Virus record (IMG/VR): IMGVR_UViG_3300044796_000657 | Coordinates: 124,001 to 188,000 of that record | DNA length: 64,000 bases | Direction: 5' to 3' (one strand) | Part shown: in pieces, positions 7,045 through 52,099 of the stretch | Layout: each line of letters starts with the position of its first letter | How positions within the stretch are numbered: the stretch's first letter is position 1 | Program-made: the position numbers and the translations under genes | The notes under the pieces: model-generated | What the model was told of the DNA's origin: nothing | Database searches by the model: none | The model's input: the letters and a program-made list of their open reading frames with translations, nothing else

Positions 7045-7411
7045 TGGAGGTGTCGAGAATCGAACTCGATTCCTATCGTTCAGCACTAAATTCTTCATTC
7101 ACGTGTGTCTTCAGCATGTTTTTGTTCGCTCACATGGCACATTACTGCGAAGCCATGTTACGCTAATGATCTTACCATTTAGTTAGCCGCTCTTCCAGAC
7201 CATAAGGTGAGCAGCGATCCTGATTTAACAACGGAACTTTCTCCCCTTCAGGCTAGAAGATCAGTTCCGGGCCATTAACCGAAGTTAGGCGGCCATGCGG
7301 AGCTCAGGCTCAACATTTAAAGTTTTTTCATGGAATTTTTACGTGGCCAACCATGAATCCACGACACGCAGAAACTTAACACTCAAACGTAGTCGATACC
7401 AGTTCACCCCC
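7045..7411 (-). ncRNA. ssrA: tmRNA, tag (A)VEPELRMAA
   Basis: 5' GGGGGTGAACTGGTATCGAC; 3' TCGAG-TTCGATT-CTCGA-CACCTCCA with G3.U70 pair; tag ORF 7314-7285 after TTAAAT ending GCC GCC TAA; 367 nt. Confidence 0.93.
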
Positions 7412-13422: not shown

Positions 13423-13568
13423 GGCCGTATTTAGCCAAAATTACATAAATATGCGAAGATGGTTTTTGGGCCGGAAACTATATTAGTGGTTGAGAGGCAG
13501 TATTCGGAAAATCAACCATTTCGGGAATATATAAGGCACCGGGCGCAGGTATAGAGGAAAGAAACGTA

Positions 13569-15569
13569 ATGTCACATGAAAAAGATGTCCGTGAATTGAA
13601 GTTAAATATTGTTGCAGGTGAAGGTCTAGCCGATTTGCGAACCAAAGATGTCGGGCAAGATGGCATGAAATTGCACAAGAAGAAACATCATCACCACAAC
13701 GACAGTTCGGGAAACTCTTCCGGATCTGGCGACTCGTCAAATTCGTCCGGCTCTGAAAACAATTCTTCGGAATCATCCGGTTCTGGTTCTGGGGATGCAA
13801 CTTCACAATCAAGCGGCTCTGCTGAAAGTGTTGCTTCAAGCGGAAACAGTCGATCAAATGACTCATCAGGTTCTTCTAATTCGGGTTCAGGTTCGGGGGA
13901 ATCTCATTCTGGTTCAGGGGACTCCAGCGGAAGCAACGCCTCTAAATCATCAGGTTCGGAATCCATCACATCTTCGCAATCGTCTGGGTCAAGTGGATCG
14001 TCCGGCGTATCTTTCTCCGAAGAAAGTTCAGCGGGTCGTGATAACCGCAACAAGGATACAGGGGAAGAGCATAAAGGAAGAATGATGAAAAACCGCAATG
14101 TCATCAACGAAGTTGTTGATGGAAAGGTTTTTCATGAATTCAAGGATTATGTGGCGGAAGTTAACAATCAAACTGCCGATGTAAAAAGTAACCCACATCA
14201 AAATGTAGGTGGAAATATCCCTACACCTAAAAAGTTCCACAAAGCAGCTATGAAAGCCAAAATGGGCAAAGTGGCGATGATGGGTGCCGCTATGATGGGC
14301 AACAATTGTGTTAAACAACAAGGGTTGATTGGTCGCTTATCTACTCACGTTCAAACCCGTGAAAAAGTTGGTGAAAAATCTCCTTCATTACAAGATGCAA
14401 AAGAATTGCTTTTGATCCTCCAAGTTCGTTATGCCAATAATTGTCAAGGCAATGGCATGATGATGAATAAAGGATCGTCATCGTCGTCAGATTCAGGCAT
14501 GAGCAACATGATGATGACGGGGAAAAAAGGCATGAATGGCATGATGATGATGGGTGGCGGCGGGCCGGGTGGTCCAGGGCCGGGGCCGGGCATGAGTGGA
14601 GGGCCGGGTATGGGTGGCGGGGGTCAAAGCAATCCTAATATGATGAAGATGAAGAAAAAAATGATGATGACGCCAATGATGAAAATGATGACGCCTGCGA
14701 TGATGACGAAAATGAAACAAACGATGATGATGATGACGAAAATGAAATCTAAGAAGATGAAATCTCAAAAGAAATCAAAATCAAAGAATTCAAAACCAAA
14801 ATCTCAAAAATCTAAATCACAATCGAAACCGAAATCAGGTGGTGGGCCGGGCGGGCCGGGCAGTCACGGTATGGGGCCAAAAATCACAGGAAGTAGCAGT
14901 AGCGACAACTCCTCATTTGTGCCGTTTTCTAGTTCAGCACAATCAAGTGCAAATGGCAGCTTGAGAGCAAGACTACAAAAGCGAAAAAACAACAGATACC
15001 ATGTATCAACCAGCAAAAGAGCAATTATCGCCGATGAGTTAAAACTTAACAAAGAAGAAGAATTGCCGATTTTTGATGTGGCAGGTGATAAGCCCAACAC
15101 ACCTAGCTTGAGCTGGTGGTGGCCAAGTCCTCCTGAAATCATTAACAGAATGTTCACAATGGCAAATCTCAAAGAAGGCGAAACCGTCTTTGACTTAGGC
15201 TGTGGTGATGGTCGTATTCCGGTTCAAGCAGCAACCAAATGGGGCTGCACAGGTGTTGGAGTTGACTTTGATGAAAACCTTTGCCGTCAAGCGAAAAAGC
15301 GGGCCATTAGATTGAAAGTTGAAGATAAGGTTGAAATCAGACACGGCGATGCATTAAAAGTTAATGATATTGAACGTGCTGATGTTGTGACGCTATATAT
15401 TCTTGATAGAGGCATGAGACTTATCAAACCTATTCTTCAATCCAAGTTGAAGAAGGGTGCGAGAATTGTTTCTCACAACTATAAATTCAAAAATTGGGAG
15501 CCAGTCAAAGAAGTGGTTGCCACTGATAAAGAAGGTCATAAGCACTGGATTTATCTCTACGTGGTTTAA
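13569..15569 (+). CDS. Ser/Gly- and Lys/Met-rich low-complexity protein with C-terminal class I SAM methyltransferase (protein-lysine MTase-like)
   Basis: VFDLGCGDGRI, GVDFD, ADVVTLY and GARIVSHNY in the last ~160 aa. Confidence 0.85.
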   Translation: MSHEKDVRELKLNIVAGEGLADLRTKDVGQDGMKLHKKKHHHHNDSSGNSSGSGDSSNSSGSENNSSESSGSGSGDATSQSSGSAESVASSGNSRSNDSSGSSNSGSGSGESHSGSGDSSGSNASKSSGSESITSSQSSGSSGSSGVSFSEESSAGRDNRNKDTGEEHKGRMMKNRNVINEVVDGKVFHEFKDYVAEVNNQTADVKSNPHQNVGGNIPTPKKFHKAAMKAKMGKVAMMGAAMMGNNCVKQQGLIGRLSTHVQTREKVGEKSPSLQDAKELLLILQVRYANNCQGNGMMMNKGSSSSSDSGMSNMMMTGKKGMNGMMMMGGGGPGGPGPGPGMSGGPGMGGGGQSNPNMMKMKKKMMMTPMMKMMTPAMMTKMKQTMMMMTKMKSKKMKSQKKSKSKNSKPKSQKSKSQSKPKSGGGPGGPGSHGMGPKITGSSSSDNSSFVPFSSSAQSSANGSLRARLQKRKNNRYHVSTSKRAIIADELKLNKEEELPIFDVAGDKPNTPSLSWWWPSPPEIINRMFTMANLKEGETVFDLGCGDGRIPVQAATKWGCTGVGVDFDENLCRQAKKRAIRLKVEDKVEIRHGDALKVNDIERADVVTLYILDRGMRLIKPILQSKLKKGARIVSHNYKFKNWEPVKEVVATDKEGHKHWIYLYVV

Positions 15570-15583
15570 CCCAAAGGAAACAT

Positions 15584-16507
15584 ATGTCAAATAACGAAAA
15601 TGATCTGATCCCGCAAAACGCTGAACATGTCGGCCAGAATATTCCTACGCCCAAAAAGGAGAAAATGACCACCAAAAAAGGCAAGATGAAGGCCAAGATG
15701 GGAAAGGGTAAAAAAGCTCACATGAAAGCCAAGATGGGAAAAGGAAAGAAAGCTCACATGATGAGCAAAGCCCATATGGCTAAGATGGCTAAGAAAAAGA
15801 TGAAGGCCAAAATGCAGAAGCCTCAAATGAAGGCTAAGATGAAGATGAAGGCCAAAATGAAAAAGGCCAAGATGATGATGACGGGTATGACGGGCGGCAT
15901 GTCGATGGCCCAAATGAAATCAAAAATGAAGTCTCAGATGAAGTCAAAGATGAAATCATCTAAGACTCCAAAAATGAAATCATCGAAACAACCAAAGTCA
16001 ATGGGCCAATCACAACAAAGTGGGCCGGGTCCAGGACCAGGTCCAGGGCCGGGGCCGGGTGGTGGCGGATCGGGTAACCAATCTAAGAAATCTAAATCGA
16101 AATCAAAGATGATGGGATCATCGGCTTCCGGTATGATGTCTAAGATGAAAAATTCGAAGTCAACGAAATCTAAGCCTAAATCACAATCACAATCACAATC
16201 TAAGCCACAATCTACAAAATCCCAACCGGACTTCTGTAAGAATACAAGATTGAAATTGGATACTTTACTTCAAAGAATTGATAGACTGCAAGTTTTAGGC
16301 GATACTGAAAACCTAACTTGGAGCAAACGACTATACAGAATCATGGAAGATCGTTATGCACAATTCTGCAAGTCCAGTAGTAGTGCTTCAACAGGTAGTT
16401 TAACTAGTAGTGTAATTAGCAGTGCGGTCAGTAGTGCGGCTGGCAGCAGTAGTCAAGCCAATGGTAGCTTGAGAGCTAGATTGAAAAAACGTTGGAAAAA
16501 TCGTTAA
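15584..16507 (+). CDS. Lys/Met-rich low-complexity protein, paralogue of the N-terminal part of 13569-15569
   Basis: shared NIPTPKK, KAKMGK, GPGPG, RYAxxC and ANGSLRARL. Confidence 0.8.
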   Translation: MSNNENDLIPQNAEHVGQNIPTPKKEKMTTKKGKMKAKMGKGKKAHMKAKMGKGKKAHMMSKAHMAKMAKKKMKAKMQKPQMKAKMKMKAKMKKAKMMMTGMTGGMSMAQMKSKMKSQMKSKMKSSKTPKMKSSKQPKSMGQSQQSGPGPGPGPGPGPGGGGSGNQSKKSKSKSKMMGSSASGMMSKMKNSKSTKSKPKSQSQSQSKPQSTKSQPDFCKNTRLKLDTLLQRIDRLQVLGDTENLTWSKRLYRIMEDRYAQFCKSSSSASTGSLTSSVISSAVSSAAGSSSQANGSLRARLKKRWKNR

Positions 16508-16510
16508 ACT

Positions 16511-16539
16511 AAAAAGCCCGGCAATTGCCGGGCTTTTTT
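16511..16539. terminator. bidirectional terminator, GCCCGGC family
   Basis: aaaaagcccggc-aatt-gccgggcttttt between convergent genes. Confidence 0.85.
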
Positions 16540-17384
16540 CATTTCAACAATTTGAGAGCATCAACATCATTTGTCGCAACATTATACAATGGCGTATATG
16601 TTGAGTTTAGACATTCTTCAACAGCCGTAATAGGGAAATTAACCTTTAACCCGATGGCATAACTGTGTACACCAGTATTGGCTGGTTCTACCTTTTGATG
16701 AGTTTCACAGATACTAGGATTGCCATTGTGTCTCTTAAACCACCACTTCAAAGCAATAGAATGGATTAAATCCAAATTCATACCGGAACCACTTCCGCCA
16801 TATGCGCCATGTAAACCCGTGGTACTCAAATAACTAACATTGTGATTCCAATTATAAACAAACTTGGACATGACATAGTGAAGTACTTGATAGAAATCCA
16901 CTTCTGGTAATGTTTCTATTAATCTCAAGGCGGTATAAACCAAAGGTGCATTAGACTGAACAAAACGATAACAACACAGACCCGAATAAACCCGATGACG
17001 GTTTTCACCTGTACCGGGGATATGAGCCATCGGCCCCTTCTTATCAATGTAATATCGTGATGATTCCGGCATCAAACCGTTAACTTTACACAAATCCATC
17101 CAGCGAATATAATCCTCATCGGAAATCAAAAACTGCACATTAGGATGACAGTTAAAGACCCCGCTGGTGATATATTTCATGCTCCCCATATAACAAGGTG
17201 CGTTAGTGACAAGTGCCGTTTCTTTAACTTCGTGACCTACAATATCCGATACGGTGTAAGTCACATAATCGTAATGATAACTAGATATGATATGAGGCGG
17301 CAAGTCAATCAATTCCTTGTCAGATATTTTTGGCCTCGAATGTACTGGTATAACTGGCGGCATCAAGAGTTGGTTGTGGTACAT
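16539..17384 (-). CDS. hypothetical protein
   Basis: 281 aa ORF. Confidence 0.7.
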   Translation of the reverse strand: MYHNQLLMPPVIPVHSRPKISDKELIDLPPHIISSYHYDYVTYTVSDIVGHEVKETALVTNAPCYMGSMKYITSGVFNCHPNVQFLISDEDYIRWMDLCKVNGLMPESSRYYIDKKGPMAHIPGTGENRHRVYSGLCCYRFVQSNAPLVYTALRLIETLPEVDFYQVLHYVMSKFVYNWNHNVSYLSTTGLHGAYGGSGSGMNLDLIHSIALKWWFKRHNGNPSICETHQKVEPANTGVHSYAIGLKVNFPITAVEECLNSTYTPLYNVATNDVDALKLLK

Positions 17385-17929
17385 CGCAATTCCGTTATCA
17401 GTAATTGAAGATCGTTCGAAACTAATTCTTTAGCACTTTCATTTTTCATTAACTGAGCTGGATGATAAGTACAAAGAACTCGTTTGTCCATATAAAAATG
17501 CCAAAAACCTCTAGCATTATCCACATCCATACCAATCAAGGCAGTAGATGCGACACTTCCCAAACAAACAATGAATTGAGGGTTCACAATGGAAATTTGC
17601 TTTTCCAAATGACTCAAGCAACTATGAACTTCATTTAAATCCGGCAACCGATTGAGCGGAGGGCGACATTTGATGACATTGGTAATGTAAACAGATTCTC
17701 TTGTCAAGCCGCATTTGACAATCATGGCAGTTAATAAAGCATTTGTCTTTCCAATGAATGGCAAACCCTCTTTATCATCATCAATATTCGGTGCTTCGCC
17801 GACAAACATCACCTTGGCATTTGGACTGCCGGTACCAAATACTGGATATGTCCTAAATTGACATAGAGTACATTTGCGACATCGCTCAACTGTCTCTGAT
17901 AATTCCAGTAAGTCAATCACTTTCATCAT
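17363..17929 (-). CDS. udg: uracil-DNA glycosylase family 4
   Basis: CRKCTLC, VGEAP, PFIG, KCRPP and TYHPA. Confidence 0.93.
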   Translation of the reverse strand: MMKVIDLLELSETVERCRKCTLCQFRTYPVFGTGSPNAKVMFVGEAPNIDDDKEGLPFIGKTNALLTAMIVKCGLTRESVYITNVIKCRPPLNRLPDLNEVHSCLSHLEKQISIVNPQFIVCLGSVASTALIGMDVDNARGFWHFYMDKRVLCTYHPAQLMKNESAKELVSNDLQLLITELRCTTTNS

Positions 17930-18363
17930 CAACTCACCTTTGGCCAAATGATTGTTTCTCCGCCCGGACATAACACAATGCCCGCTGCCATAAGCTGTTT
18001 ATCAATCTTCATGACAGTCAAAGAGTCTTTTTTGCCTGATGCATCATATCGCAAATCCAACAATGTTGAAATCAACTTGTCAACGGTTGGATCGGTACTG
18101 AAACTCACTGGTCGTAAAATCTGCACACTTACAGACTTACCCGATCTTGCGGCGAGTTGTTCAATTTCTTGTGAGTTTCTTTCGGGAAAATCCACTTCGG
18201 CAAAACCTGATACGATCTTTGCTCGAAGAGTTCCCTGTGACAACGAACGAATAATACCCTCATTCGGAAGATTGACATCCTGTGTATAAGTATACCAAAT
18301 TTCACGGTTGGGGCTATTAACGTTGAGGCTGAGTTTCATAGCTACACGATTTTTGGAAGCCAT
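17929..18363 (-). CDS. hypothetical protein
   Basis: 144 aa ORF in operon. Confidence 0.6.
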   Translation of the reverse strand: MASKNRVAMKLSLNVNSPNREIWYTYTQDVNLPNEGIIRSLSQGTLRAKIVSGFAEVDFPERNSQEIEQLAARSGKSVSVQILRPVSFSTDPTVDKLISTLLDLRYDASGKKDSLTVMKIDKQLMAAGIVLCPGGETIIWPKVS

Positions 18364-18836
18364 TTGGATAGATTGGCATCTTGCTCTCTGACAAGATTTG
18401 CCAAATCGGTTCGATACTCCTGTAGTTTAACAAGAATTTCTTTATTATCCAATGCCAAAATTTGTAAAGCCAATAGCGCCGCATTTTCGCCAGCATCCAC
18501 ACCAACCGTTGCGACAGGCACACCCTTGGGCATTTGACTTGTACTCAACAAACTGTCTAGTCCCATTAGCGATGTACTCAACGGTACACCGATCACAGGC
18601 TTGAGAGTGTGAGAAGCCACAACGCCCGCTAAGTGGGCTGCTTTGCCCGCTGCGCAAACGTACACACGGCATCCTTTGACTTCACAATGCTTGACATACT
18701 CCAAAAGATCAACAGGGCTGCGATGCGCACTCAATATGTGAGCATCGAATTCAACTCCAAATCTCTTGAAGATTTCGCAAATTTCTTTCACCGTAGCGAA
18801 ATCGGCATTACTTCCCGACAGGACTGTCACTAACAT
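18342..18836 (-). CDS. purE: N5-carboxyaminoimidazole ribonucleotide mutase
   Basis: GSNAD, SAHRSP, AGKAAHLAG and QMPKGVPVATV; true start MLVTVLSG. Confidence 0.95.
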   Translation of the reverse strand: MLVTVLSGSNADFATVKEICEIFKRFGVEFDAHILSAHRSPVDLLEYVKHCEVKGCRVYVCAAGKAAHLAGVVASHTLKPVIGVPLSTSLMGLDSLLSTSQMPKGVPVATVGVDAGENAALLALQILALDNKEILVKLQEYRTDLANLVREQDANLSKWLPKIV

Positions 18837-19176
18837 TAATTTGCTCTTTTCTAAATGAACCAATGTATCGTTGCATATGATCTTGAACCGCTTTGGCGTC
18901 TTCTGGATCTTTCCAAGTCCACAAAATACGATGATCGGTAGCGCCGCCAAGGGGCTTTGCCGAAGTACTTGAATAAGTTCGGGCTTGCTGTATGAAATCC
19001 ACATTTTGTTGCGGATCATACCCAATGGTGATGATGAGCTTGCCATTAATTCTGTCAACTGTTTTTTGCTCGGCATCCTGTGTGAATGTCACAGGCAAAC
19101 CAACGCAAACTAACACGGTAAAAAGGATACCGAGTAGAAAGCCGATAAAAGCACAGTACATCTTACCAGTGTTCAT
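18808..19176 (-). CDS. small membrane-anchored protein
   Basis: N-terminal hydrophobic helix. Confidence 0.55.
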   Translation of the reverse strand: MNTGKMYCAFIGFLLGILFTVLVCVGLPVTFTQDAEQKTVDRINGKLIITIGYDPQQNVDFIQQARTYSSTSAKPLGGATDHRILWTWKDPEDAKAVQDHMQRYIGSFRKEQINVSDSPVGK

Positions 19177-19499
19177 GATTTTCTCCACCAATTGCCTCCG
19201 AGTCCAAATTCGCCATCTTCGTGATCCCATCCCATTGTGGGAAAGTTTCCTTCGATAGCGACATTGGCACCTTGCCAAACGGCTCGGATCTTAACAAGTG
19301 AGTCGGTTTCAAAATGGACAACCAAATCAGATTCGTGGTGTCTCTCAGTGACGGCATCATATTGTCCGTAGACGTAAACGGCGGTGTCTTCTTCGCCTTC
19401 AACGAACAGGATCGTTCGGGCCAATTTGCTCACTGCCTCTTTGGGTGTAGCCTCAATGATCAAATGTGATATAAAATTAATTAACCTTTTGCCAATCAT
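19173..19499 (-). CDS. hypothetical protein
   Basis: 108 aa ORF with GAGG SD. Confidence 0.65.
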   Translation of the reverse strand: MIGKRLINFISHLIIEATPKEAVSKLARTILFVEGEEDTAVYVYGQYDAVTERHHESDLVVHFETDSLVKIRAVWQGANVAIEGNFPTMGWDHEDGEFGLGGNWWRKS

Positions 19500-19529
19500 A
19501 AATTCCTCTTTTAATTCCGCATGTACGCA

Positions 19530-19555
19530 CCCACGTTGCCAGAGGGCAACGTGGG
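19530..19555. other. strong GC-rich intergenic hairpin
   Basis: cccacgttgcc-agag-ggcaacgtggg, 11-bp stem. Confidence 0.7.
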
Positions 19556-19629
19556 AAGAAGTACGATTCTGACTGAACCTGATTGAGATTCGAACTCAAT
19601 TCGCTCAATGATAGCTACCCGATGTGGTT

Positions 19630-20004
19630 TTATCCACCAGTTGCACGACGGGGCCATTCAGTCCCGCAGTCTTTGAATTTGGCCGTACTTCTATTGAAAA
19701 TATATCCTATCGCTTCGGTGTCGTCGGCGAGTTGGATTTTGTCTCGACGGTAAAGATCAGGCACAGCTTCCAACCAATCCAAATTCATGAGAATGTCGCT
19801 GGAAGACACCTCAAACAATTCCCCTTTAATGGCTCGCCCATCTTTTTCATCAAAGGTAATGCAGGGATAACTCCCGCAGTCATACAATTTGTACAACGGT
19901 TTGGTCGTTGCTTCACTGAGGAACTTACTATCACCCAAAATGCGGTGATTGTGGTATCCTCTTTTGAGCGTACCATAAACGAAAACCTTTACCGGCTCAA
20001 ACAT
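19630..20004 (-). CDS. gamma-glutamylcyclotransferase (AIG2-like)
   Basis: VFVYGTLKRG, GELFEV and LDWLE. Confidence 0.9.
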   Translation of the reverse strand: MFEPVKVFVYGTLKRGYHNHRILGDSKFLSEATTKPLYKLYDCGSYPCITFDEKDGRAIKGELFEVSSSDILMNLDWLEAVPDLYRRDKIQLADDTEAIGYIFNRSTAKFKDCGTEWPRRATGG

Positions 20005-20774
20005 GGCATAACCTCTTGGATTTTATGAGCATTAAGACGCAATTCTTTCATGATCTCCGCTTGCCGACTTCGTTGAACACCATAAACTTCTGCCACTTGC
20101 TGTATCGTTAACTTGTCATCGAATCGCTTCAAGATGGCCTGTTGTTCTTTTTCTGTAATTTCCAAATCATCCATACACTTTCGCATTGCGGCGAAGTTTT
20201 TCGGAAATTCATATTCATCATCCCAACTAACCAACAAATCTTCCGGCATATCATCCGGATTTCTGAATTCTAATTGTTGTGTAGCATTGATTCGATTAGT
20301 TTGACCACACTTCCTGAAGTAGTCTTTATACTGACGAAACAAACAACTCATGGCAAAGGTGCTAAATTTGAATTTGTTGTTAATGTCAAATTTATCAATT
20401 GCCCTTATCAACGCCAATGCTCCGTGTTGAGCCAGATCATCAAAAAGTGAAAACGCATCAGGCTTCGCTTTTGCCCGGACTTTGGACATGTTGACCAAAA
20501 TCCGATAATTGCTCAAAAAGATAACATCACGGACAGCCAGTGCCACTCCGTACCGTTTGCTGTATTTCAAATAGTTGAATTTCCCAAACAGGAAAGTTTC
20601 TTGCTCTGGTGTTAACAATGGCGTTTTACAGAGGGAAGTGGTGCTGGTTCTCCGTGTTGAAACAATACGCTCTTGATCATAGTACCATTCAGGATACACT
20701 TCCCACTGACGACATAACTTGTCATCGTGAAAAGTTGCATGATCAATGTATTCTTCCCTCATGGCATGACCCAT
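19989..20774 (-). CDS. sigma-70 family RNA polymerase sigma factor
   Basis: PLLTPEQE..LF.KFNYLKY, SNYRILV, ALIRAIDKFD, FKFSTFA and region-4 HTH. Confidence 0.88.
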   Translation of the reverse strand: MGHAMREEYIDHATFHDDKLCRQWEVYPEWYYDQERIVSTRRTSTTSLCKTPLLTPEQETFLFGKFNYLKYSKRYGVALAVRDVIFLSNYRILVNMSKVRAKAKPDAFSLFDDLAQHGALALIRAIDKFDINNKFKFSTFAMSCLFRQYKDYFRKCGQTNRINATQQLEFRNPDDMPEDLLVSWDDEYEFPKNFAAMRKCMDDLEITEKEQQAILKRFDDKLTIQQVAEVYGVQRSRQAEIMKELRLNAHKIQEVMPCLSR

Positions 20775-21223
20775 TAGGTTGTTATAGGTTTAACACTCGC
20801 CGCAATCTGCGCATCGACCAATTCCAGAGTGATGTTGGCCTTGCGAAGCATAATAGCCGCAGGATCAGTTGCACTCATCAAAATCGCACGCAGAAGGTGC
20901 TGACAGGCAATGAACTTGGCAGGAAGGCCAATATCAATTGCCATACAAATTAACCTTCCCACGCTTTGACTGTAAGGAACACCTACCGAATGCGTAGAGT
21001 ATTTGCCTTTGCCTAGCGTTTGGCGAATATCATCTTGCATGGTTTTCGTGTTAACGCCCAGCGCCTTGAGGACGGAGGCACCAACATTTTGATCTTCGGC
21101 CAAAATGCCATAAAGCACATGAAGCCGAGTCACCAAAGGATCGCCGTTCTCTTTAGCGAAATCGTTGGCCTTCGACAATGCTTTTCTCGCACGATCAGTC
21201 ACTTTGTCGTAAAACGCATGCAT
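20774..21223 (-). CDS. stand-alone Clp ATPase N-terminal (ClpC-like repeat) domain protein
   Basis: TDRARKAL, HVLYGIL and HLLRAIL; no ATPase domain. Confidence 0.85.
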   Translation of the reverse strand: MHAFYDKVTDRARKALSKANDFAKENGDPLVTRLHVLYGILAEDQNVGASVLKALGVNTKTMQDDIRQTLGKGKYSTHSVGVPYSQSVGRLICMAIDIGLPAKFIACQHLLRAILMSATDPAAIMLRKANITLELVDAQIAASVKPITT

Positions 21224-21241
21224 CTCGTATTCCCTTTGATG

Positions 21242-21270
21242 AGTATAACATAATTGATTCCAAGAATCAA
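21242..21270 (-). promoter_or_regulatory. sigma70-type promoter TTGATT-N17-TATACT
   Basis: intergenic, before the ClpN-sigma genes. Confidence 0.7.
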
Positions 21271-21621
21271 TTACAATTTGCCAATTTCACGGATTTTTTC
21301 CAACCACGGTTCATCATCTTCCAACAAGTGAAAAACACTGCCGTTTTCAAATGTCATATGCTTTAACTTTTCGGTTCCATCAATCCAGCACTTACCCAAA
21401 GATGTATGCTCAAACATAGTGCCGATGGGTCGTTGACTGATTTCTTTAACCGTGTAAACACGCCATTCGCCACTATTGGCTTTGCCTTTGTTGATTTCGA
21501 TCATTAAAGCCTGAATGAATTCATCAGCGTAATCTTCTCTCAAGTCGAGACAACCTCTATGTCCTGCCTCGTAAACCGTCAAGACAATATCACGCAATTG
21601 ATTTAATTTAAGTCCTGCCAT
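21271..21621 (-). CDS. hypothetical protein, paralogue family A
   Basis: RVYTVKE..FEH...GKCWI...EPW shared with 30307 and 31503. Confidence 0.7.
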   Translation of the reverse strand: MAGLKLNQLRDIVLTVYEAGHRGCLDLREDYADEFIQALMIEINKGKANSGEWRVYTVKEISQRPIGTMFEHTSLGKCWIDGTEKLKHMTFENGSVFHLLEDDEPWLEKIREIGKL

Positions 21622-21622
21622 G

Positions 21623-22852
21623 TTAGGCTGCTTCCTTTCCAAACAGGGACTCTGTCCCTTGTACGATGTTTTGAGTGATAATGTACTTCGCCTGCGGTTG
21701 CTCCGGCAAGGTGAACATAATGTTAAGCATAACCCGTTCCAAAACCGCTCTAAGCCCACGGGCGCCTGTTTCTTGTTCAAGAGCCATCCGAACCATTTCC
21801 CGAAGTGCGTCATCGGTAAACTCCAATTCGCAACCCTCCATCTTGAAGAGTTTTTGATACTGCTTCACTAAGGAGTTATGTGGTTCCTGCAGGACTCTCA
21901 ATAATTCGTCTTCGCTCAACGTGAGCAATGGCGTAATAACTGGCAAACGGCCAATCAATTCGGGAATGAGGCCGTAGTGAACGAGGTCTTCGGCAACCAC
22001 CTTTTCAATCAATTCATTGCCAGTTAACTCTTTTTTGCCAGCGAAGCCAAATCCGATAGTCGTCTTGCCTGTCCGCTTAGCAATAATCTCTTTCAGACCG
22101 ACGAACGTTCCCCCAACAATAAAGAGGATGTTCGTGGTATCAATTTGAATGTATTTCTGTTCGGGGTGTTTGCGTCCCCCTTGCGCCGGGACATTACAAA
22201 TAGTCCCTTCCAACATTTTCAGCAATGATTGCTGCACACCTTCGCCTGATACGTCTCTGGTGATTGAGACATTGCCCGTTTTGCTGGCAACCTTGTCAAT
22301 TTCATCCACAAAAATAATGCCACGTTCGGCCAATGCCACATTCCAATTGGATGCCTGCAGCAATTTGAGAAGCAGATTTTCCACATCCTCACCGACATAA
22401 CCCGCTTCTGTTAACGTTGTAGCATCACCAATGGCGAAAGGCACCTTCAACATTCTGGCAAGTGTACGGGCCAACAGAGTCTTGCCGGAACCCGTTGAAC
22501 CGATCATGAGAATGTTGCTTTTCTCGATTTCGGTAGGGTCTTGCTCATCAAACATACCAGATTGAAGTCGCTTGTAGTGATTGTAAACGCCAACCGCCAA
22601 AACCTTTTTCGCCATCGATTGACCGATAACGAACTTTTCCAAAAACTCAACCATCTTGCGGGGGGCTGGCAATTGGACTTGTTCAGGATATTTGTTAGCT
22701 ACCGCAGCAGCTTTAGCATCTTCGCTGAGATAATTAGCTAGTTTGAAAGCACAACCCTTACAAATTACTCCCGCCATGCCGTTAAGCATCTCACCGCATT
22801 CGGGAGCCGGTGTACCACAAAAGCAACACTTGATGATTTTTTTGCGAGGCAT
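21623..22852 (-). CDS. clpX: ATP-dependent Clp protease ATP-binding subunit ClpX
   Basis: Zn-binding domain, [25 protein letters not shown] and IGF loop. Confidence 0.97.
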
Positions 22853-22904
22853 AATAACCCTTCATTGCGGACGAGTACCGAGTTTAACAAAATTCACTAA
22901 ATTA

Positions 22905-23654
22905 TCAAGACCATGTCAATTTACGACCGGTCAATTTAGATAATTTAACAATTTGCGGCGTGTAAAAATGTGCCACACGCTTGCGATCTTCTGGATCTAG
23001 TTTCATATCATCATAAGCCTTGTTGTATTTCTTGAGGACTTTTTCATCGTAGTCTGGCGGTACAAAAGAATCGTCCACACCAACCCACTTAAAAACTTCC
23101 CGCAAGAAACCCAATGGATCAGACACCATATCATCGTAGAACAGTACTTTTATCCGATCTGGTTCAAAGTATCGATACCAATTTTCTAAAAGATCACCGT
23201 ACATCCCCTTGGACTTTATAGAATAAGGTGAGAGTTCACCCTTGGGGTGATTGCCATCAAAAGCATCCATAAAACTCACCTCTGGTTCAATTTTCTTGTA
23301 CCATAAGTGATCCTTATAATGGCTGAATGCCCTATCAATAGGGTTTCGCAACAGTACAAACAACTTGACGTTCGGGAAATAGGTCTTTATGAGCGGTGGA
23401 GCATATGGGCAAGAAAAATAGTTTGGCGTGAATTCGCCTACGCATTCGTGTTTAAGTCTTCCGAAACACTTCAAATATCTTTTGAGGGGAATGTTAAGTC
23501 TGTCGAAGAAGTGAAATTCCTTAATTCTTTTGCCACGTGGATTCTTGGGTGTGCCGATACTTGGATGCTTCCGCATTTGTTTCCAAGTCCAAGTTGTACC
23601 GCCCTTCATTACGCCAATGCCATAAAAGTCGGGGGAACGATACTTTTTCTTCAT
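22905..23654 (-). CDS. PAPS-dependent sulfotransferase
   Basis: IGVMKGGTT (5'-PSB), KEFHFF, LLRNPIDRAFS (3'-PB). Confidence 0.9.
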   Translation of the reverse strand: MKKKYRSPDFYGIGVMKGGTTWTWKQMRKHPSIGTPKNPRGKRIKEFHFFDRLNIPLKRYLKCFGRLKHECVGEFTPNYFSCPYAPPLIKTYFPNVKLFVLLRNPIDRAFSHYKDHLWYKKIEPEVSFMDAFDGNHPKGELSPYSIKSKGMYGDLLENWYRYFEPDRIKVLFYDDMVSDPLGFLREVFKWVGVDDSFVPPDYDEKVLKKYNKAYDDMKLDPEDRKRVAHFYTPQIVKLSKLTGRKLTWS

Positions 23655-23747
23655 GATATTAAACAGTAATAGGAACGATTTTATTCGTTCCTATTGTATA
23701 GCACCTGTCCATGATGCCCATTGTTCTTTGAACAAGGGCGACAGGTA

Positions 23748-24656
23748 TTAGTCTTTGCTGATGTCGCTTGCCCCACCCTGAGCCTTGAACGTTTGGGTAA
23801 TCGATCCCCACAAACGAGCAACACCCAAAGTGCCGCTGACTTCATAAGTACCATCAGTACCAGTCAAGCGGAAAAGTGAAACCAACCGAATATCGTTTGA
23901 ATCGCCAGCATTCGTGCCACGGTCATGTAAGATCGTCCAATTTTGAGGACGTTTGAAGCTGTCAGTTGAAGGCCCGTTGACACCAATTACACCGTAAAGC
24001 AATTCTTTGTCTTGACTTGTCGTGGCAGTCATACCAGAAGTTGCGAATACAGCAGCTACCGAATTATAAGCAGCGGCAGTCTTATCGGCAGGGGTATCTT
24101 TTTCAACGTTCTTGAATTCATCGCCCATAATCACACGGCGAGCAGAAGCCGCATGGGTCACAGTCACAATGGCGTTTTTAGCAAGGGCGTTAACACCGGA
24201 CGTAGCAAACAAAGTCAATACATAGCCGCTATTGAAGGGGACTTCCGATAATTTGACGTAAGTATTACCCAAAGAGTCAGCACAACTCGTTGTACCGCTA
24301 TTTGAGGACTTGTAAGCCAAGAAAGCAATGACGATTAAAAAGTCAGTTGAATTATCGTTATGTGGGGAAGTCGCAACAGTCAAAGTTGTGGTCGTTTGCT
24401 CAGTCAAACTTGTGACGATATTATGTCCAACACTTCGCATGTATTTAACAGGGTTTTTATGAACGTGCTTACCACGAACGCCTTCTTGCAGGTCATTCAT
24501 GCGGCCTTTCATCATACGGCCTTTCATTTTACCCTTTTTCATACCCATGTGAGCTTTCTTGCCCTTGGCTTTCATTTTGCCCTTTTTGGCTTTTTTCATA
24601 TTTTGACCGTGATCTTTGTTTTGACCAGCTACATCCTGATTAGTTTCAATGCTCAT
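23748..24656 (-). CDS. putative virion protein with Lys/Met-rich N-terminus
   Basis: KKGKMKAK.GKKAHM head followed by a Thr/Ser/Ala beta-rich domain. Confidence 0.7.
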   Translation of the reverse strand: MSIETNQDVAGQNKDHGQNMKKAKKGKMKAKGKKAHMGMKKGKMKGRMMKGRMNDLQEGVRGKHVHKNPVKYMRSVGHNIVTSLTEQTTTTLTVATSPHNDNSTDFLIVIAFLAYKSSNSGTTSCADSLGNTYVKLSEVPFNSGYVLTLFATSGVNALAKNAIVTVTHAASARRVIMGDEFKNVEKDTPADKTAAAYNSVAAVFATSGMTATTSQDKELLYGVIGVNGPSTDSFKRPQNWTILHDRGTNAGDSNDIRLVSLFRLTGTDGTYEVSGTLGVARLWGSITQTFKAQGGASDISKD

Positions 24657-24734
24657 AGATTATCCCCAATCGATCTTTAACTTATATATGCACCCTTATT
24701 TCAATTATAGTGTTGTAACAAAAAAACAGTGGAC

Positions 24735-31867: not shown

Positions 31868-33025
31868 TTAGTATCCAGCGGGTTTGTCATGGCGACCAAC
31901 GAACAGAACGGCACCGGTTGGGCGATGCGTAATCACGTACATGAACGGACGATCTGCGATGAACCGGCGTGGGACTTCGGGCCGCATCATTGCCGAACAC
32001 TTCATCATCACCACTGCCGTAGCCGCCGCTGCTTCGGTACCCTTTTCCGTGGTATCGATGACTGCCTTGTGAACAGCCTTACTGACTTTGATGGACGGAG
32101 CCATCGAATTTTCCGGATACGCACCACGGAAATTGGCTTCATCCGTGAATACGATCTCCATACCCAAAGCCGAAAGGGATTCTTTCAAGTCCAAATCGGA
32201 TTCGATCTTGAACTTTGGAAGCATCAAAACAGTATCACCAGAGCGGGTAGAAGCAGTTAACTTCTGCAGTAATTCACTACTCATGTTCGCTTCGATATCG
32301 GCCAGACCATCTTGTTTTGTCGGCAGAATGACGTTAAGAACCGTATCCCCCGCATAGGGAATTTCGATCATCTGAAGATCGTCGGTCTTTGCCAACATGT
32401 AATCGCCTTGGCGTACCATCATCTGACATTCGGATTGTTGGCCGTCAGAGAGATTGAACGGTTGCTTGCGAGTTAGCCCTTCGTTGAACTTTTCTTTGAA
32501 AGTGGCGAAGAAATAGATCGCCGACACCAAAGCCATCACGGTGTCTTTGTTAAACATTTCCGGCTTGACCAAATCCTTGATCAGCGGCTCACCCTTTTCA
32601 GAAAGAGTTTGCTTGCCAACCCATTCATTGATTTCATCAGAAACTTCTTTGGACTTCGTGAAATCCGCCGAAGCCAAATTGGCACCGCTGCCTTCTTTGA
32701 GCGTCTTTTCAAACGCTTCACTGAAAGGGTAACCGTCCGATTTCCATACGGCATTGGCAGTCTTGATCGTAGCGCCGGTATCTTTGGCGAGCAAGGCGTT
32801 AATTTTTTGGATGCTCGCCAAAGTCGTAGAACACGAATTCGGAAAATTCATCGTGCTTCGCATCGATGCGGCTGTGTCCGATCTTGCCGCTGCATAAAGC
32901 ATAGCGAAACAGTCGGAGATGTTTTTGGGGGAACAAATCAAATTCCCCTTCTCCTTAACCGACAATCCCCGATAGAGATTGAAAGTGAAATCATTGATGC
33001 CAGTAATAAACTCGGTGATCTTCAT
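31868..33025 (-). CDS. serpin (serine protease inhibitor)
   Basis: NLICSP, INEWV, AIYF, LPKFKI, EKGTEAAAAT hinge and FIADRPF. Confidence 0.96.
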   Translation of the reverse strand: MKITEFITGINDFTFNLYRGLSVKEKGNLICSPKNISDCFAMLYAAARSDTAASMRSTMNFPNSCSTTLASIQKINALLAKDTGATIKTANAVWKSDGYPFSEAFEKTLKEGSGANLASADFTKSKEVSDEINEWVGKQTLSEKGEPLIKDLVKPEMFNKDTVMALVSAIYFFATFKEKFNEGLTRKQPFNLSDGQQSECQMMVRQGDYMLAKTDDLQMIEIPYAGDTVLNVILPTKQDGLADIEANMSSELLQKLTASTRSGDTVLMLPKFKIESDLDLKESLSALGMEIVFTDEANFRGAYPENSMAPSIKVSKAVHKAVIDTTEKGTEAAAATAVVMMKCSAMMRPEVPRRFIADRPFMYVITHRPTGAVLFVGRHDKPAGY

Positions 33026-33948: not shown

Positions 33949-33972
33949 GATCAGTTCTCCGTTAATGATTAG

Positions 33973-34056
33973 TAGCCGAGACGGGGGTCGAACCCGTATG
34001 CTTTTTAGGGCGAGGGATTTTAAGTCCCTTGTGTCTGCCAATTCCACCACCCGGCC
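33973..34056 (-). tRNA. trnL: tRNA-Leu(UAA), CCA not encoded
   Basis: cloverleaf GGCCGGG/CTCGGCT, D-loop GG, AGGGA-CTTAAAA-TCCCT, long variable arm, ACGGG-TTCGACC-CCCGT. Confidence 0.95.
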
Positions 34057-51290: not shown

Positions 51291-52099
51291 TTAACTTTCA
51301 ATTTTTGCTTTGCTGATAATCGCTTCCAAGTAATGTTGGGGATCATCGCTTCTTTTGGAACGTTCATCAAAGTTGGCCTATCAGCATAAGCAAACCGCAA
51401 TCCATCACGGATATTATACGATATAAACTTCAGCAAATAAACACCAACATTGTCATTCCACACAACATTAACTTGTTTGCCAACCGTGATCAAGGTGTTA
51501 GATTGAGTAGTTGCTATTGCCGTAGCGGGACTTGCCGTATTCCAAAAAGTTGTAGCAGATATTCCAAAATGACTAACATTCCAATTGGTCTGCACACTTG
51601 TACCAATAACCTGCCGATCAGAATAACCTGCACACTTGGAAATACCAACAAGAGATGCCACATCAAAAATGACACCCATTTGACGAAACATCAAAATGTG
51701 ATTATCATAAACAATCAATAACCATTTCGCTATTGGGCGATTAATATTCCAAGTGGTTTCTGCTGATACTGCAACATTGTGGTGATTGCCAAAAACAACC
51801 TTGCGGTACCTTTTTCTGGTAAAACAAATTGACCAATTAGTATCACTGATAATGCGAACAACTGCTGCAGTCGTCCAATTAGCCTGCACACTTGCCGTTG
51901 TCAATTTCAATACATTGGCAAATGACTCACAAACAATGGAAACTCGATTATCTAATTTCCATTGCGTCGAAACGGAAATACCAACAAGTTGTTTTTGCGA
52001 CCACGTTGTTTCCACCGAATGAGCAGTGACTTTAACGACCGTGTTCCAACGACAACTTTTCTGTCTTCCAGCAACAATATAATCGAGGTCATACATCAA
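51287..52099 (-). CDS. virion-associated protein with TxWN repeats
   Basis: periodic Trp motifs as in 53142-57227. Confidence 0.65.
   Translation of the reverse strand: MMYDLDYIVAGRQKSCRWNTVVKVTAHSVETTWSQKQLVGISVSTQWKLDNRVSIVCESFANVLKLTTASVQANWTTAAVVRIISDTNWSICFTRKRYRKVVFGNHHNVAVSAETTWNINRPIAKWLLIVYDNHILMFRQMGVIFDVASLVGISKCAGYSDRQVIGTSVQTNWNVSHFGISATTFWNTASPATAIATTQSNTLITVGKQVNVVWNDNVGVYLLKFISYNIRDGLRFAYADRPTLMNVPKEAMIPNITWKRLSAKQKLKVK

What the first reader, a model, noticed from the sequence alone, without database searches (positions are those of the whole stretch)
13569..24656. Family of Lys/Met-rich disordered proteins with a built-in candidate lysine methyltransferase
Seen: the 666-aa and 307-aa tandem genes share modules in shuffled order: GxNIPTPKK, KAKMGK runs, GPGPG linkers, a C...RYAxxC helical segment and ANGSLRARL(Q/K)KR. 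The 666-aa protein adds an N-terminal His/Ser/Gly tract and a C-terminal SAM methyltransferase whose motifs resemble FAM173/DOT1-like protein-lysine methyltransferases. A third gene (23748-24656) carries the same KKGKMKAK..GKKAHM head on a structural-looking beta domain. All lie behind TAAATA/TATATA late-type boxes. Inference: a writer-plus-substrate system in which polycationic tails are methylated, possibly for DNA condensation, condensate formation or virion decoration. The extreme Met content might also scavenge oxidants or bind metals.
Basis: partly seen in the sequence, partly recalled or inferred. Interest (0 to 1): 0.75.

Follow-up and report, generated by a model that had tools for sequence, protein, structure and literature searches.

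The report
Met/Lys-rich phage proteins with lysine methyltransferase
A huge phage from peat carries a small, co-regulated set of extremely methionine- and lysine-rich floppy proteins, one fused to an enzyme of the archaeal protein-lysine methyltransferase type, so the phage may chemically modify its own, probably particle-associated, proteins; this has not been described before and is not yet proven.

Summary
The window lies in a 430-kb huge-phage record from peat. Two more family members lie outside the window, so 5 of 645 genes are compositional outliers.

The C-terminal domain of the 666-aa protein is an aKMT-type seven-beta-strand methyltransferase. Its best solved relatives are 5bxy (E 3e-27) and Sulfolobus aKMT (E 6e-26). 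The predicted fold superposes on aKMT with TM 0.92 and rmsd 1.1 A. NCBIfam's protein-lysine methyltransferase model is the top hit but scores below its equivalog cut-off.

The fusion gene followed by a Met/Lys-rich partner gene is seen in four related metagenomic loci. Relatives add Ig-like domains. A helical hairpin closed by two cysteines (C-x20-G-x5-x17/18-C) is specific to the pair.

The 302-aa protein has a disordered Met/Gly/Lys head. Its beta domain matches phage proteins annotated as minor tail proteins.

All four transcription units of the family sit behind a rare TATATA(A/T) box (binomial p about 2e-7). The box is also present upstream of the homologous genes in related contigs.

Methylation of the tracts is inferred, not shown. 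The evidence leans toward virion-associated proteins rather than DNA condensers. In the 302 family, Met and Gly are more constant than Lys, which cautions against a purely polycation-based reading.

The parts
13528..13535 (+). TATATAAG box 41 nt upstream of the 666-aa start; candidate promoter element of the fusion-partner operon
   Evidence: TATATA[AT] lies within 60 nt upstream of 14/645 genes but of 4/4 family transcription units. The same box sits at -40 and -30 before the homologous fusion genes in L008 and L002.
13569..15569 (+). 666-aa modular protein: low-complexity N-terminal two thirds plus C-terminal methyltransferase
   Evidence: ORF. AF2 model: 376 residues have pLDDT <50; only the hairpin and the methyltransferase domain are confident.
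13674..14063 (+). His run and Ser/Gly/Asp/Glu-rich acidic tract (residues ~36-165)
   Evidence: S 44%, G 17%, net charge -9. A similar tract is present in the L008 858-aa protein and in P0020.
14205..14306 (+). GGNIPTPKK leader motif and first KAKMGK / Met-rich run (residues 213-246)
   Evidence: The same motif opens the 307-aa protein.
14307..14444 (+). Cys-bounded helical hairpin, fusion type (C247-x20-G-x5-x18-C292; GEKSPSLQDAKELL)
   Evidence: AF2 helices 231-266 and 272-293 at pLDDT 90-96. The spacing is kept in 7 of 8 family proteins. An HMM of it hits only the two tandem proteins in the genome (E 1e-23 and 1e-24; next hit 0.056).
14445..14951 (+). Met/Gly run, GPGPG linker, K/M run, KSKSKP run and poly-Ser (residues 293-461)
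   Evidence: M 19%, K 15%, G 19%, S 18%, net +26. Short imperfect DNA tandem repeats of period 9-30.
14955..14984 (+). GSLRARLQKR motif at the junction before the methyltransferase domain
   Evidence: The same motif ends the 307-aa protein and the L010 510-aa partner, and it precedes the methyltransferase domain in the L010 fusion.
15087..15569 (+). aKMT-type seven-beta-strand SAM methyltransferase domain (residues ~507-666), including the WWPSPPE and DLGCGDGRI motifs
   Evidence: PDB sequence search: 5bxy E 2.8e-27, aKMT 5fa8 E 6e-26. NF041081 E 3.6e-30. Foldseek: 5fa8 TM 0.92, rmsd 1.1 A. pLDDT 95-98.
15584..16507 (+). 307-aa partner protein without methyltransferase, probably co-transcribed (14-nt gap)
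   Evidence: No Pfam, PHROG or NCBIfam hit. ESM Atlas model mean pLDDT 0.47. A partner gene follows the fusion gene in L003, L008, L010 and L002.
15584..15913 (+). Leader (GQNIPTPKK) and K/M runs of the partner (residues 1-110)
   Evidence: K 29%, M 20%, R 0, net +28. 36-nt DNA repeat. Beta-type K/x alternation p<0.001; no alpha-helical amphipathicity.
15914..16228 (+). MKS/KSK runs and GPGPG linker of the partner (residues 111-215)
16235..16369 (+). Cys-bounded helical hairpin, partner type (C218-x20-G-x5-x17-C262; GDTENLTWSKRLY)
16370..16504 (+). Poly-Ser tail ending in ANGSLRARLKKRWKNR
23748..24656 (-). 302-aa protein: Met/Lys/Gly head on a beta-sandwich domain
   Evidence: 13 homologues at 48-75% identity.
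24459..24656 (-). Disordered head (residues 1-66) with GQN, KKGKMKAK and GKKAHM
   Evidence: pLDDT <40. K 24%, M 14%, G 15%. Heads of all 12 full-length homologues are Met/Gly-rich.
23751..24458 (-). Conserved beta domain (residues 67-302)
   Evidence: 13 strands, pLDDT mostly 75-90. Foldseek BFVD E 1e-8 to 1e-4 to uncharacterised Caudovirales proteins and actinophage 'minor tail proteins'. AFDB clusters: terminal domain of PKD, FN3, dockerin and Peptidase_S74 proteins.
24681..24688 (-). TATATAAG box 32 nt upstream of the 302-aa start, just after a terminator-like hairpin (24746-24726)
   Evidence: The homologous genes in L004 (-34) and L008 (near-match, about -33) carry it too.

Best explanation
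The three genes belong to a five-member, co-regulated family of modular, mostly disordered Met/Lys/Gly/Ser-rich proteins. The family is specific to a small clade of huge phages from peat and soil. I read them as virion-associated fibre or decoration proteins. The 666-aa member is a partner-type protein to which an aKMT-type protein-lysine methyltransferase has been appended. The most likely mechanism is that this enzyme uses SAM in the infected cell to methylate the dense lysine runs. Its probable substrates are its own polypeptide and the tandem 307-aa partner, and perhaps the 302-aa head. Methyl-lysine keeps the positive charge but changes protease sensitivity, hydrophobicity and binding. 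Shown: the anatomy, the family membership of the enzyme fold, the conserved gene pairing, and the shared upstream box. Inferred: lysine as the acceptor, the tracts as substrates, virion location, and the benefit.
For: Enzyme identity. The best solved relatives are 5bxy and Sulfolobus aKMT (E 3e-27 and 6e-26). NF041081 'protein-lysine N-methyltransferase' is the top NCBIfam hit, 21 orders of magnitude ahead of the next family. The predicted fold superposes on aKMT at TM 0.92 and rmsd 1.1 A; the next different fold family scores TM 0.41. SAM motif residues D542, G544 and G546 are invariant. aKMT is a broad-specificity lysine methyltransferase, and FAM173A/B are its lysine-specific relatives (PMC9006661, PMC8927968, PMC5828452).

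Link to the tracts. The enzyme is covalently joined to K/M runs in the window protein, the L008 858-aa protein and P0020. A K/M-rich partner gene follows the fusion gene in all five loci where the downstream region is visible. The tracts use Lys almost exclusively (R = 0 in the best 60-residue window in 6 of 8 family proteins, including the window pair). K-dense low-complexity extensions recur in 15 of 78 extended members of the wider methyltransferase family.

Co-regulation. TATATA[AT] lies upstream of 4 of 4 family transcription units against 14 of 645 genes overall (p 2e-7), and it is present in relatives.

Virion association. Big_3_5 Ig-like domains occur in the homologous pair of relatives. 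The 302-aa domain matches phage minor-tail-type proteins. The Cys-stapled hairpin and poly-Ser linkers are typical of proteins that face the outside (inference).
Against: There is no experimental or proteomic evidence of methylation or of virion location. The methyltransferase scores below the NCBIfam equivalog cut-off (105 against 200 bits). The closest solved relative, 5bxy, is labelled an RNA methyltransferase by its depositors. In the 302 family Lys is variable (8-26%) while Met and Gly are constant, and one head has net charge -1. Lysine methylation therefore cannot be the whole rationale of the heads. The window's own two proteins lack Ig-like domains. The genes sit among replication, metabolism and regulation genes, not in a recognisable structural module. 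The hairpin-hairpin complex prediction gave no answer. The phage encodes no SAM synthetase.
Confidence: 0.4

Rival explanations
1. The methyltransferase is a broad-specificity lysine methyltransferase aimed at other proteins, either host proteins or other phage proteins. The Met/Lys-rich region would then be a tether, localisation or scaffolding element rather than the substrate.
For: aKMT methylates most of the Sulfolobus proteome (PMC8927968, citing Chu 2016). More distant relatives of the methyltransferase (P0034 and P0045, 41-47% identity) carry long helical N-terminal regions without K/M tracts. The genes lie among host-interaction and regulatory genes such as a sigma factor, ClpX and a serpin.
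Against: A K/M partner gene always follows the fusion gene. The fusion protein looks like a partner-type protein with the enzyme added after the shared GSLRARLxKR motif. This points to a relationship within the pair.
Confidence: 0.2
2. The tracts are nucleic-acid binders resembling histone H1 tails or protamine. They would act as internal head proteins or intracellular DNA/RNA condensers, with affinity tuned by methylation as in Cren7.
For: Net charge is +24 to +28 per ~100 residues. TPKK and KSKPKS elements resemble S/TPKK minor-groove motifs (my own knowledge, not tested). Methylation by aKMT lowers Cren7-DNA affinity 2.6-fold (PMC8927968). The 307-aa tract shows beta-type K/x alternation suited to an extended polyanion.
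Against: Ig-like domains, poly-Ser linkers, a Cys-stapled hairpin and a minor-tail-like receptor-type domain are unusual for packaged DNA-binding proteins. Several 302-family heads are barely basic. No prohead protease of families S77 or S78 was found that could process internal proteins.
Confidence: 0.15
3. The Met/His/Gly-rich runs are the functional element. They would act as Cu(I)/Ag(I)-binding 'Mets' motifs or as sacrificial antioxidant tails, and lysine content would be secondary.
For: Met (12-28%) and Gly are the constant features of the 302-family heads, with His up to 11%. The L008 partner has MKKAHMGD-type octapeptide repeats. These recall the Met/His repeats of CopA/PcoA and SilE, and the GGM tails of GroEL (my own knowledge, not tested).
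Against: This does not explain the fused lysine methyltransferase or the near-exclusive use of Lys over Arg. No metal-handling genes were seen beside the family. The resemblance rests on composition only.
Confidence: 0.1
4. The methyltransferase acts on RNA, DNA or a small molecule, and the fusion to the low-complexity protein is incidental.
For: The closest solved structure, 5bxy, is deposited as 'RNA methyltransferase'. Generic class I methyltransferase Pfam families also match. The domain is below the equivalog cut-off for the lysine methyltransferase model.
Against: The 5bxy name is a structural-genomics label. The members of this group that I know to be biochemically characterised (aKMT, FAM173A/B) are lysine methyltransferases (PMC9006661). 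The fusion is conserved in at least four related contigs.
Confidence: 0.1

Closest known systems
aKMT (crenarchaeal protein-lysine N-methyltransferase; PDB 5fa8, 5fad, 5jwj; NCBIfam NF041081) and its distant eukaryotic relatives FAM173A/B (ANT-KMT, ATPSc-KMT)
   Same: Compact ~155-residue seven-beta-strand domain. Shared motifs are (Y/W)xP(T/S)P, DLGCGDGRI and SH(D/E/N)(F/Y). 34% identity, predicted TM 0.92 and rmsd 1.1 A. aKMT methylates many lysines on small basic chromatin proteins.
   Different: Below the equivalog score (105 against 200 bits). Phage-encoded. Fused behind ~500 residues of Met/Lys/Ser/Gly low-complexity sequence. The FAM173 transmembrane and pre-methyltransferase regions were not looked for. 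Activity is untested.
Bacterial members of the same methyltransferase family with Lys/Pro/Glu-rich linkers or tandem methyltransferase domains (e.g. representatives P0047, P0021, P0027, P0056)
   Same: The same methyltransferase domain (36-41% identity; E 1e-31 to 1e-65) is joined to K-dense low-complexity sequence in 15 of 78 extended members.
   Different: Their tracts are K/P/E/D-rich and not Met-rich. They lack the hairpin, the GPGPG runs and the partner gene. Their function is also unknown.
Mycobacterial HBHA/LBP and rickettsial OmpB (surface adhesins whose lysine-rich regions are methylated)
   Same: Functional analogy only: lysine-dense exposed tails that are multiply methylated, which protects against proteolysis (my own knowledge).
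   Different: No sequence relationship was tested or expected. The enzymes differ, the systems are bacterial rather than viral, and there is no Met enrichment.
Chlamydial SET methyltransferase with histone-like Hc1/Hc2, and aKMT with Cren7/Sul7d
   Same: A writer together with a small polycationic DNA-binding substrate in prokaryotes (PMC8927968 for Cren7).
   Different: The substrates there are folded or Ala/Lys-rich DNA binders. Here the partners carry Ig-like domains in relatives, poly-Ser and a Cys-stapled hairpin, and DNA binding is untested.
Actinophage 'minor tail proteins' and the terminal ~220-residue beta domain of large PKD/FN3/Peptidase_S74 proteins
   Same: The predicted fold of residues 70-292 of the 302-aa protein matches them (Foldseek E 1e-8 to 1e-11, TM by hit up to 0.77).
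   Different: Identity is 10-27%. None of those hits is known to carry a Met/Lys/Gly head. The 'minor tail' names come from gene position, not experiment.

Membership tests
aKMT-type protein-lysine methyltransferase (NF041081; PDB 5fa8) | Class I (seven-beta-strand) fold with SAM-binding motif I, D-x-G-x-G-x-G | tested here: met
   DLGCGDGRI aligns identically to aKMT and 5bxy. D542, G544 and G546 are invariant in 50 sequences. pLDDT is 95-98.
aKMT-type protein-lysine methyltransferase (NF041081; PDB 5fa8) | Compact ~155-residue domain that superposes on solved aKMT over its whole length | tested here: met
   Foldseek: 5fa8 E 6.9e-18, TM by target 0.92, rmsd 1.1 A over 152 columns. The next fold family (Trm11) has TM 0.41. 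One side is a prediction.
aKMT-type protein-lysine methyltransferase (NF041081; PDB 5fa8) | Score above NCBIfam's equivalog cut-off (200 bits) | tested here: not met
   104.9 bits, E 3.6e-30, covering 1-138 of 142 profile positions. It is a relative of the family, not an equivalog.
aKMT-type protein-lysine methyltransferase (NF041081; PDB 5fa8) | Transfers methyl groups to the epsilon-amino group of protein lysines | not testable with these tools
   Needs an enzyme assay or mass spectrometry.
DOT1 histone methyltransferase (PF08123) | Match over the DOT1 catalytic domain, not only over the SAM-binding core | tested here: not met
   23.8 bits against a cut-off of 23, covering only positions 28-90 of 205. 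DOT1L structures rank 25th or lower with TM by target 0.38.
FAM173A/B (ANT-KMT, ATPSc-KMT) | N-terminal transmembrane segment and conserved pre-methyltransferase region before the domain (PMC9006661) | not tested
   No direct comparison with FAM173 sequences was run. The link is through aKMT only.
Bacterial Ig-like domain group 3 (PF16640, Big_3_5), as a marker of virion or surface proteins | Pfam match above the gathering score | tested here: not met
   No match in the window's 666-aa or 307-aa proteins. It is met in the homologous L008 689-aa partner (43.3 bits against 35.5) and is sub-threshold in the L008 858-aa and L003 proteins.
Phage minor tail / receptor-binding-type beta domain | Fold match to virion tail proteins with experimental support | tested here: inconclusive
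   BFVD matches of E 1e-8 to 1e-4 include 'minor tail proteins' named by position. Solved structures match only weakly (Foldseek E >0.01; VIA Z <=7.2 over the C-terminal half).
T4-type internal head proteins with a cleavable targeting peptide | L/I-x-E cleavage motif after the leader, plus a prohead protease in the genome | tested here: inconclusive
   An LxE-like motif precedes the conserved domain in several 302-family members. No Peptidase_S77 or S78 match was found in the genome, and the S77 control rang nowhere.
Cationic amphipathic alpha-helical (membrane-active) peptides | Helical hydrophobic moment above that of composition-matched shuffles | tested here: not met
   The moment at 100 degrees lies below most shuffles (p 0.66-0.98 for the four tracts tested).
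Met/His 'Mets-motif' copper or silver binding proteins (CopA/PcoA, SilE) | Metal binding by MxxM/HxxM repeats | not tested
   Compositional resemblance only.

The most novel reading that the evidence does not exclude
A clade of huge phages encodes a self-contained protein-modification cassette. A structural low-complexity protein carries its own aKMT-type lysine methyltransferase. It methylates itself, its tandem partner and other family members that share the head, so that virions display methyl-lysine/methionine-rich fibres. To my knowledge this would be the first phage-encoded lysine 'writer' dedicated to the phage's own particle proteins.
Probability: 0.3. Interest if true: 0.8.

Novelty: new variant of a known kind. 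Interest (0 to 1): 0.6.

Why it matters
Lysine methylation of proteins is well known in eukaryotes and archaea, and on a few bacterial adhesins. My literature searches found no report of a phage-encoded protein-lysine methyltransferase tied to its own substrate. If the reading is right, it adds a post-translational modification system to the repertoire of huge phages. It also gives a compact enzyme-substrate pair that can be tested in E. coli. It defines new sequence modules: the Met/Lys head, the Cys-stapled hairpin and the GSLRARLxKR tail. None of these is covered by Pfam, PHROGs or NCBIfam. Finally, the rare conserved TATATA box offers a handle on transcription classes in an uncultured 430-kb phage.

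Tried and rejected
Searches that found nothing:
- Megablast of the region against GenBank phages found no match.
- Four IMG/VR scans with the methyltransferase and 302-aa proteins or their alignments confirmed no relative. Relatives came only from metagenome proteins and contigs.
- A word-indexed protein search with the hairpin and C-terminal region of the 307-aa protein passed nothing at E 0.001.
- The ESM Atlas gave no related cluster for the 307-aa protein; the best feature score was 0.58.

Tests that gave no usable answer:
- The complex prediction of the two hairpins returned 'no answer' (score 0.01). It is not used as evidence either way.
- Reads and contigs from a peat RNA library cover the pair at 100% identity and at a depth similar to the neighbours. 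They also cover intergenic DNA, so transcription is not shown.

Ideas tested and not supported:
- The amphipathic alpha-helix (membrane-active peptide) idea is rejected. The helical moment is below that of shuffles.
- The idea of a propeptide cleaved by a prohead protease could not be supported. No S77 or S78 protease was found.
- Anchoring the TATATA box to known late genes failed. Pfam capsid and sheath models find nothing in this genome.
- The genome has no SAM synthetase and no second aKMT-type enzyme.
TATAAATA occurs 10 times in the genome and only once upstream of a gene.

Full report
**Setting.** The window is bases 124001-188000 of a single-contig virus record of 430,229 bases. IMG/VR classes the record as a provirus and CheckV puts completeness at 97%. 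It encodes a large terminase and has no 16S rRNA. The DNA is held by a peat metagenome run. The genes around the finding are typical of huge phages. They include an AAA/clamp-loader-like ATPase, UDG, PurE, a gamma-glutamyl cyclotransferase-like protein, a sigma factor, a Clp_N-domain protein, ClpX, a sulfotransferase and PRPP synthetase. Further out lie ParB, a serpin, an aldehyde dehydrogenase, a tmRNA and a tRNA-Leu.

**The observation.**
- The tracts hold 15-29% Lys and 14-20% Met, against 7.4% and 2.9% in the phage proteome. Arg is essentially absent from the 666 and 307 tracts (5% in the 302 head).
- Only five of 645 genes in the genome have 7 or more Met in any 30 residues, or GPGPG runs.
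- These five are the three named genes plus two outside the window. One is a 105-aa protein at C1:421831-422148(-) with a K/M head and a small Cys-rich domain. The other is a 359-aa protein at C1:427698-428777(+) with MGMGMG and GPGPG runs and a GGSLSL motif.
- At the DNA level the tracts are short imperfect tandem repeats of period 9-36.
- Similarity between the 666-aa and 307-aa proteins is confined to short modules. BLASTP gives E 0.001 for NGSLRARLxKR and 0.1 for the hairpin. An HMM of the hairpin built from eight family proteins picks out exactly these two proteins in the genome, with E 1e-23 and 1e-24 and the next hit at 0.056.
- The 302 and 307 heads share KKGKMKAK and GKKAHM. Their DNA aligns better than all but about 1% of codon shuffles.

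**The enzyme.** Pfam sees only generic class I methyltransferase families, with DOT1 and PrmA close to their cut-offs over the SAM-binding core. The more specific searches agree with one another.
- Against solved structures, the C-terminal 199 residues match 5bxy (E 2.8e-27) and Sulfolobus islandicus aKMT (5fa8 at E 6e-26, 5jwj at E 1e-24). The next hit is at 4e-8.
- NCBIfam's NF041081 'protein-lysine N-methyltransferase' model is the top hit at E 3.6e-30 over the whole profile. The score of 105 bits is below the 200-bit equivalog cut-off.
- An AlphaFold2 model built on a 50-sequence alignment gives pLDDT 95-98 for residues 510-666.
- That model superposes on aKMT-SAM with TM 0.92 and rmsd 1.1 A. 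The next different enzyme family reaches only TM 0.41.
- The literature describes aKMT as a broad-specificity lysine methyltransferase that methylates the chromatin proteins Cren7 and Sul7d. It describes FAM173A/B as distant lysine-specific homologues (PMC9006661, PMC8927968, PMC5828452).

The accurate label is an aKMT-type domain. It is a relative of the family, not an equivalog, and its acceptor is not established.

**Relatives.** An exhaustive profile search found more than 9,000 representative proteins with this domain. Only a few are close to the window protein. P0017 is 344 aa with 78% identity. P0020 is 604 aa with 71% identity. An 858-aa protein lies on a 33-kb contig (L008), and there are two partial copies (L010, L012).
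- P0020 and the 858-aa protein have a Ser/Gly/His tract and a K/M run, and both carry the hairpin sequence next to the methyltransferase domain.
- P0017 has the hairpin and a small Cys-rich domain.
- In all five loci where the downstream DNA is visible, a Met/Lys-rich partner gene follows at once. Its size is 307 aa in the window, 473 aa in L003, 689 aa in L008 and 510 aa in L010, and only the start is visible in L002.
- The partners keep K/M runs (38-43 K+M in the best 60 residues), GPGPG, KSKSK(P), poly-Ser and the hairpin. Arg is 0 in that window in 6 of the 8 family proteins.
- The hairpin has an exact spacing of C-x20-G-x5-x17-C in partners and x18 in fusions. It is kept in 7 of 8 proteins.
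- The GS(L/R)xARLxKRxK motif ends the 307-aa and L010 partners. It also stands just before the methyltransferase domain in the window and L010 fusions. The fusion protein therefore looks like a partner-type protein with the enzyme added at its end.
- Relatives also carry Big_3_5 Ig-like domains. The L008 partner scores 43.3 bits against a cut-off of 35.5, and two others are sub-threshold. The window's shorter versions lack them.
- L008 is syntenic with the window across the whole stretch, from the 302-aa homologue to the AAA ATPase. The three genes therefore co-occur in at least two genomes.

**The third gene.** The 302-aa protein has 13 homologues at 48-75% identity. Each has a conserved C-terminal domain of about 235 residues behind a variable low-complexity head. 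AlphaFold2 gives a 13-strand beta domain with pLDDT mostly 75-90, and a head with pLDDT below 40.
- The domain matches uncharacterised Caudovirales proteins and actinophage 'minor tail proteins' in BFVD, with E 1e-8 to 1e-4.
- It also matches the terminal domain of large PKD, FN3, dockerin and Peptidase_S74 proteins in AlphaFold DB, with E as low as 2e-11.
- Solved structures give only weak jelly-roll resemblances of the TNF/C1q or collagen-binding type.

'Structural-looking' is fair. A tail-fibre or receptor-binding role is a reasonable reading but is not shown. Across the 12 full-length homologues the heads always hold 12-28% Met and 10-24% Gly. Lys, in contrast, ranges from 8 to 26%, and one head has net charge -1. 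For this subfamily the conserved property is Met/Gly richness, not polycationic charge.

**Predicted disorder and the hairpin.** In the 666-aa model, 376 residues have pLDDT below 50. The exceptions are the methyltransferase domain, a two-helix hairpin (231-266 and 272-293, pLDDT 90-96) and one K/M helix at about 80. The two cysteines lie 20 and 18 residues from the turn, so they should face each other. That arrangement would allow a disulfide staple or a metal site; this is inference. A complex prediction of the two hairpins gave no answer.

**Regulation.** TATATAA is the most enriched 7-mer in intergenic upstream regions of this phage, found before 8 genes against 0.7 expected.
- TATATA[AT] lies within 60 nt upstream of 14 of 645 genes overall. 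It lies upstream of all four transcription units of the family, which gives a binomial p of 2e-7.
- The 666-aa and 302-aa genes share (A/C)ATATATAAG at -41 and -32.
- The same box stands at -40, -30 and -34 before the homologous genes in L008, L002 and L004, with a near-match in L008.
- Partner genes have no box and follow the fusion gene after a short gap.

This supports a shared promoter-type element. Whether it is 'late' is unknown, because capsid and sheath genes could not be found with Pfam models.

**Mechanism.** The best-supported account is as follows. The family consists of co-regulated, probably virion-associated fibre or decoration proteins. The fused aKMT-type enzyme methylates the lysine runs of its own chain and of its partner before assembly.
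- Supporting this are the covalent and syntenic coupling and the near-exclusive use of Lys rather than Arg.
- Also supporting it is the recurrence of K-dense extensions in 15 of 78 extended members of the wider methyltransferase family.
- The analogies are HBHA/LBP and OmpB, where methyl-lysines protect exposed lysine-rich tails, and aKMT with Cren7.
- I put this account at about 0.4.
- The rivals are other protein targets (0.2), nucleic-acid binding or internal proteins (0.15), metal binding or antioxidant Met tails (0.1) and a non-protein acceptor (0.1).
- A membrane-active amphipathic helix is rejected. The helical moment is lower than in shuffles, although the 307-aa tract shows significant alternation of Lys with Met or Ala.

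**Novelty.** No Pfam, PHROG or NCBIfam model covers the heads, the hairpin or the tails. Full-text searches found no report of a phage protein-lysine methyltransferase tied to virion or low-complexity substrates. The enzyme is a new member of a known family. The architecture and its partner system are a new variant. The function remains to be shown.

Noticed in passing
G000:C1:427698-428777(+) and 428764-429366(+) (= L009:15698-16777 and 16764-17366), outside the window: The fifth family member is a 359-aa protein with MGMGMG and GPGPG runs. Its C-terminal domain is widespread but uncharacterised. Its gene overlaps the start of a 200-aa Peptidase_C39-like cysteine protease gene (Pfam E 2.6e-18). 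C39 proteases cut leader peptides, so the low-complexity heads might be removable leaders.
   Followed up: partly
G000:C1:421831-422148(-) (= L009:9831-10148): This 105-aa protein has a K/M head followed by a small Cys-rich domain (CxC...EC...C). The same domain occurs at the N-terminus of P0017 and inside the L003 473-aa partner. A TATATAT box lies 27 nt upstream.
   Followed up: partly
window 22905-23654 (-); L004, L005, L006/L008: A sulfotransferase gene lies next to the 302-aa gene in the window and in relatives. Relatives add a PF11397 GlcNAc-transferase between the two genes. L004 and L005 also have a 2OG-Fe(II) oxygenase, LicD and a short-chain dehydrogenase just upstream. This looks like a cluster of protein- or glycan-modifying enzymes around this gene.
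   Followed up: no
whole genome: A second upstream motif, GTGACCATACACC, is about 5-fold enriched and found before about 20 genes. It is probably a major promoter or operator of this phage. It is absent from the Met/Lys family genes.
   Followed up: no
window 7045-7411 (-) and 33972-34056 (-): A tmRNA gene (tag peptide VEPELRMAA) and a tRNA-Leu(TAA) are encoded in the phage window.
   Followed up: no
window 31868-33025 (-), 40301-41851 (-), 48587-49801 (-): The window encodes a full-length serpin (Pfam E 6e-96), an aldehyde dehydrogenase (E 2e-120) and an arginyl-tRNA-synthetase-like protein that matches only part of the catalytic domain. The serpin is conserved in the related contig L006.
   Followed up: no
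window 52096-53121 (-) and 53142-57227 (-): A 341-aa protein of PHROG 2448 (unknown function, E 4e-39) begins MTMLFMDGFDHY. It lies next to a 1361-aa ORF with no family match. Together they are possible structural genes, and a TATATAA lies 10 nt before the 341-aa start.
   Followed up: no
whole record: The 302-aa protein is recorded on a contig of 614,480 bases, whereas the virus record is 430,229 bases and is classed as a provirus. Either the record was trimmed from a longer contig, or the phage genome is larger than the record.
   Followed up: no
window 16539-17384 (-): A 281-aa protein with no family match lies convergent to the partner gene. It is kept in the same place (266-268 aa) in L003 and L008, between the partner gene and UDG.
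   Followed up: no
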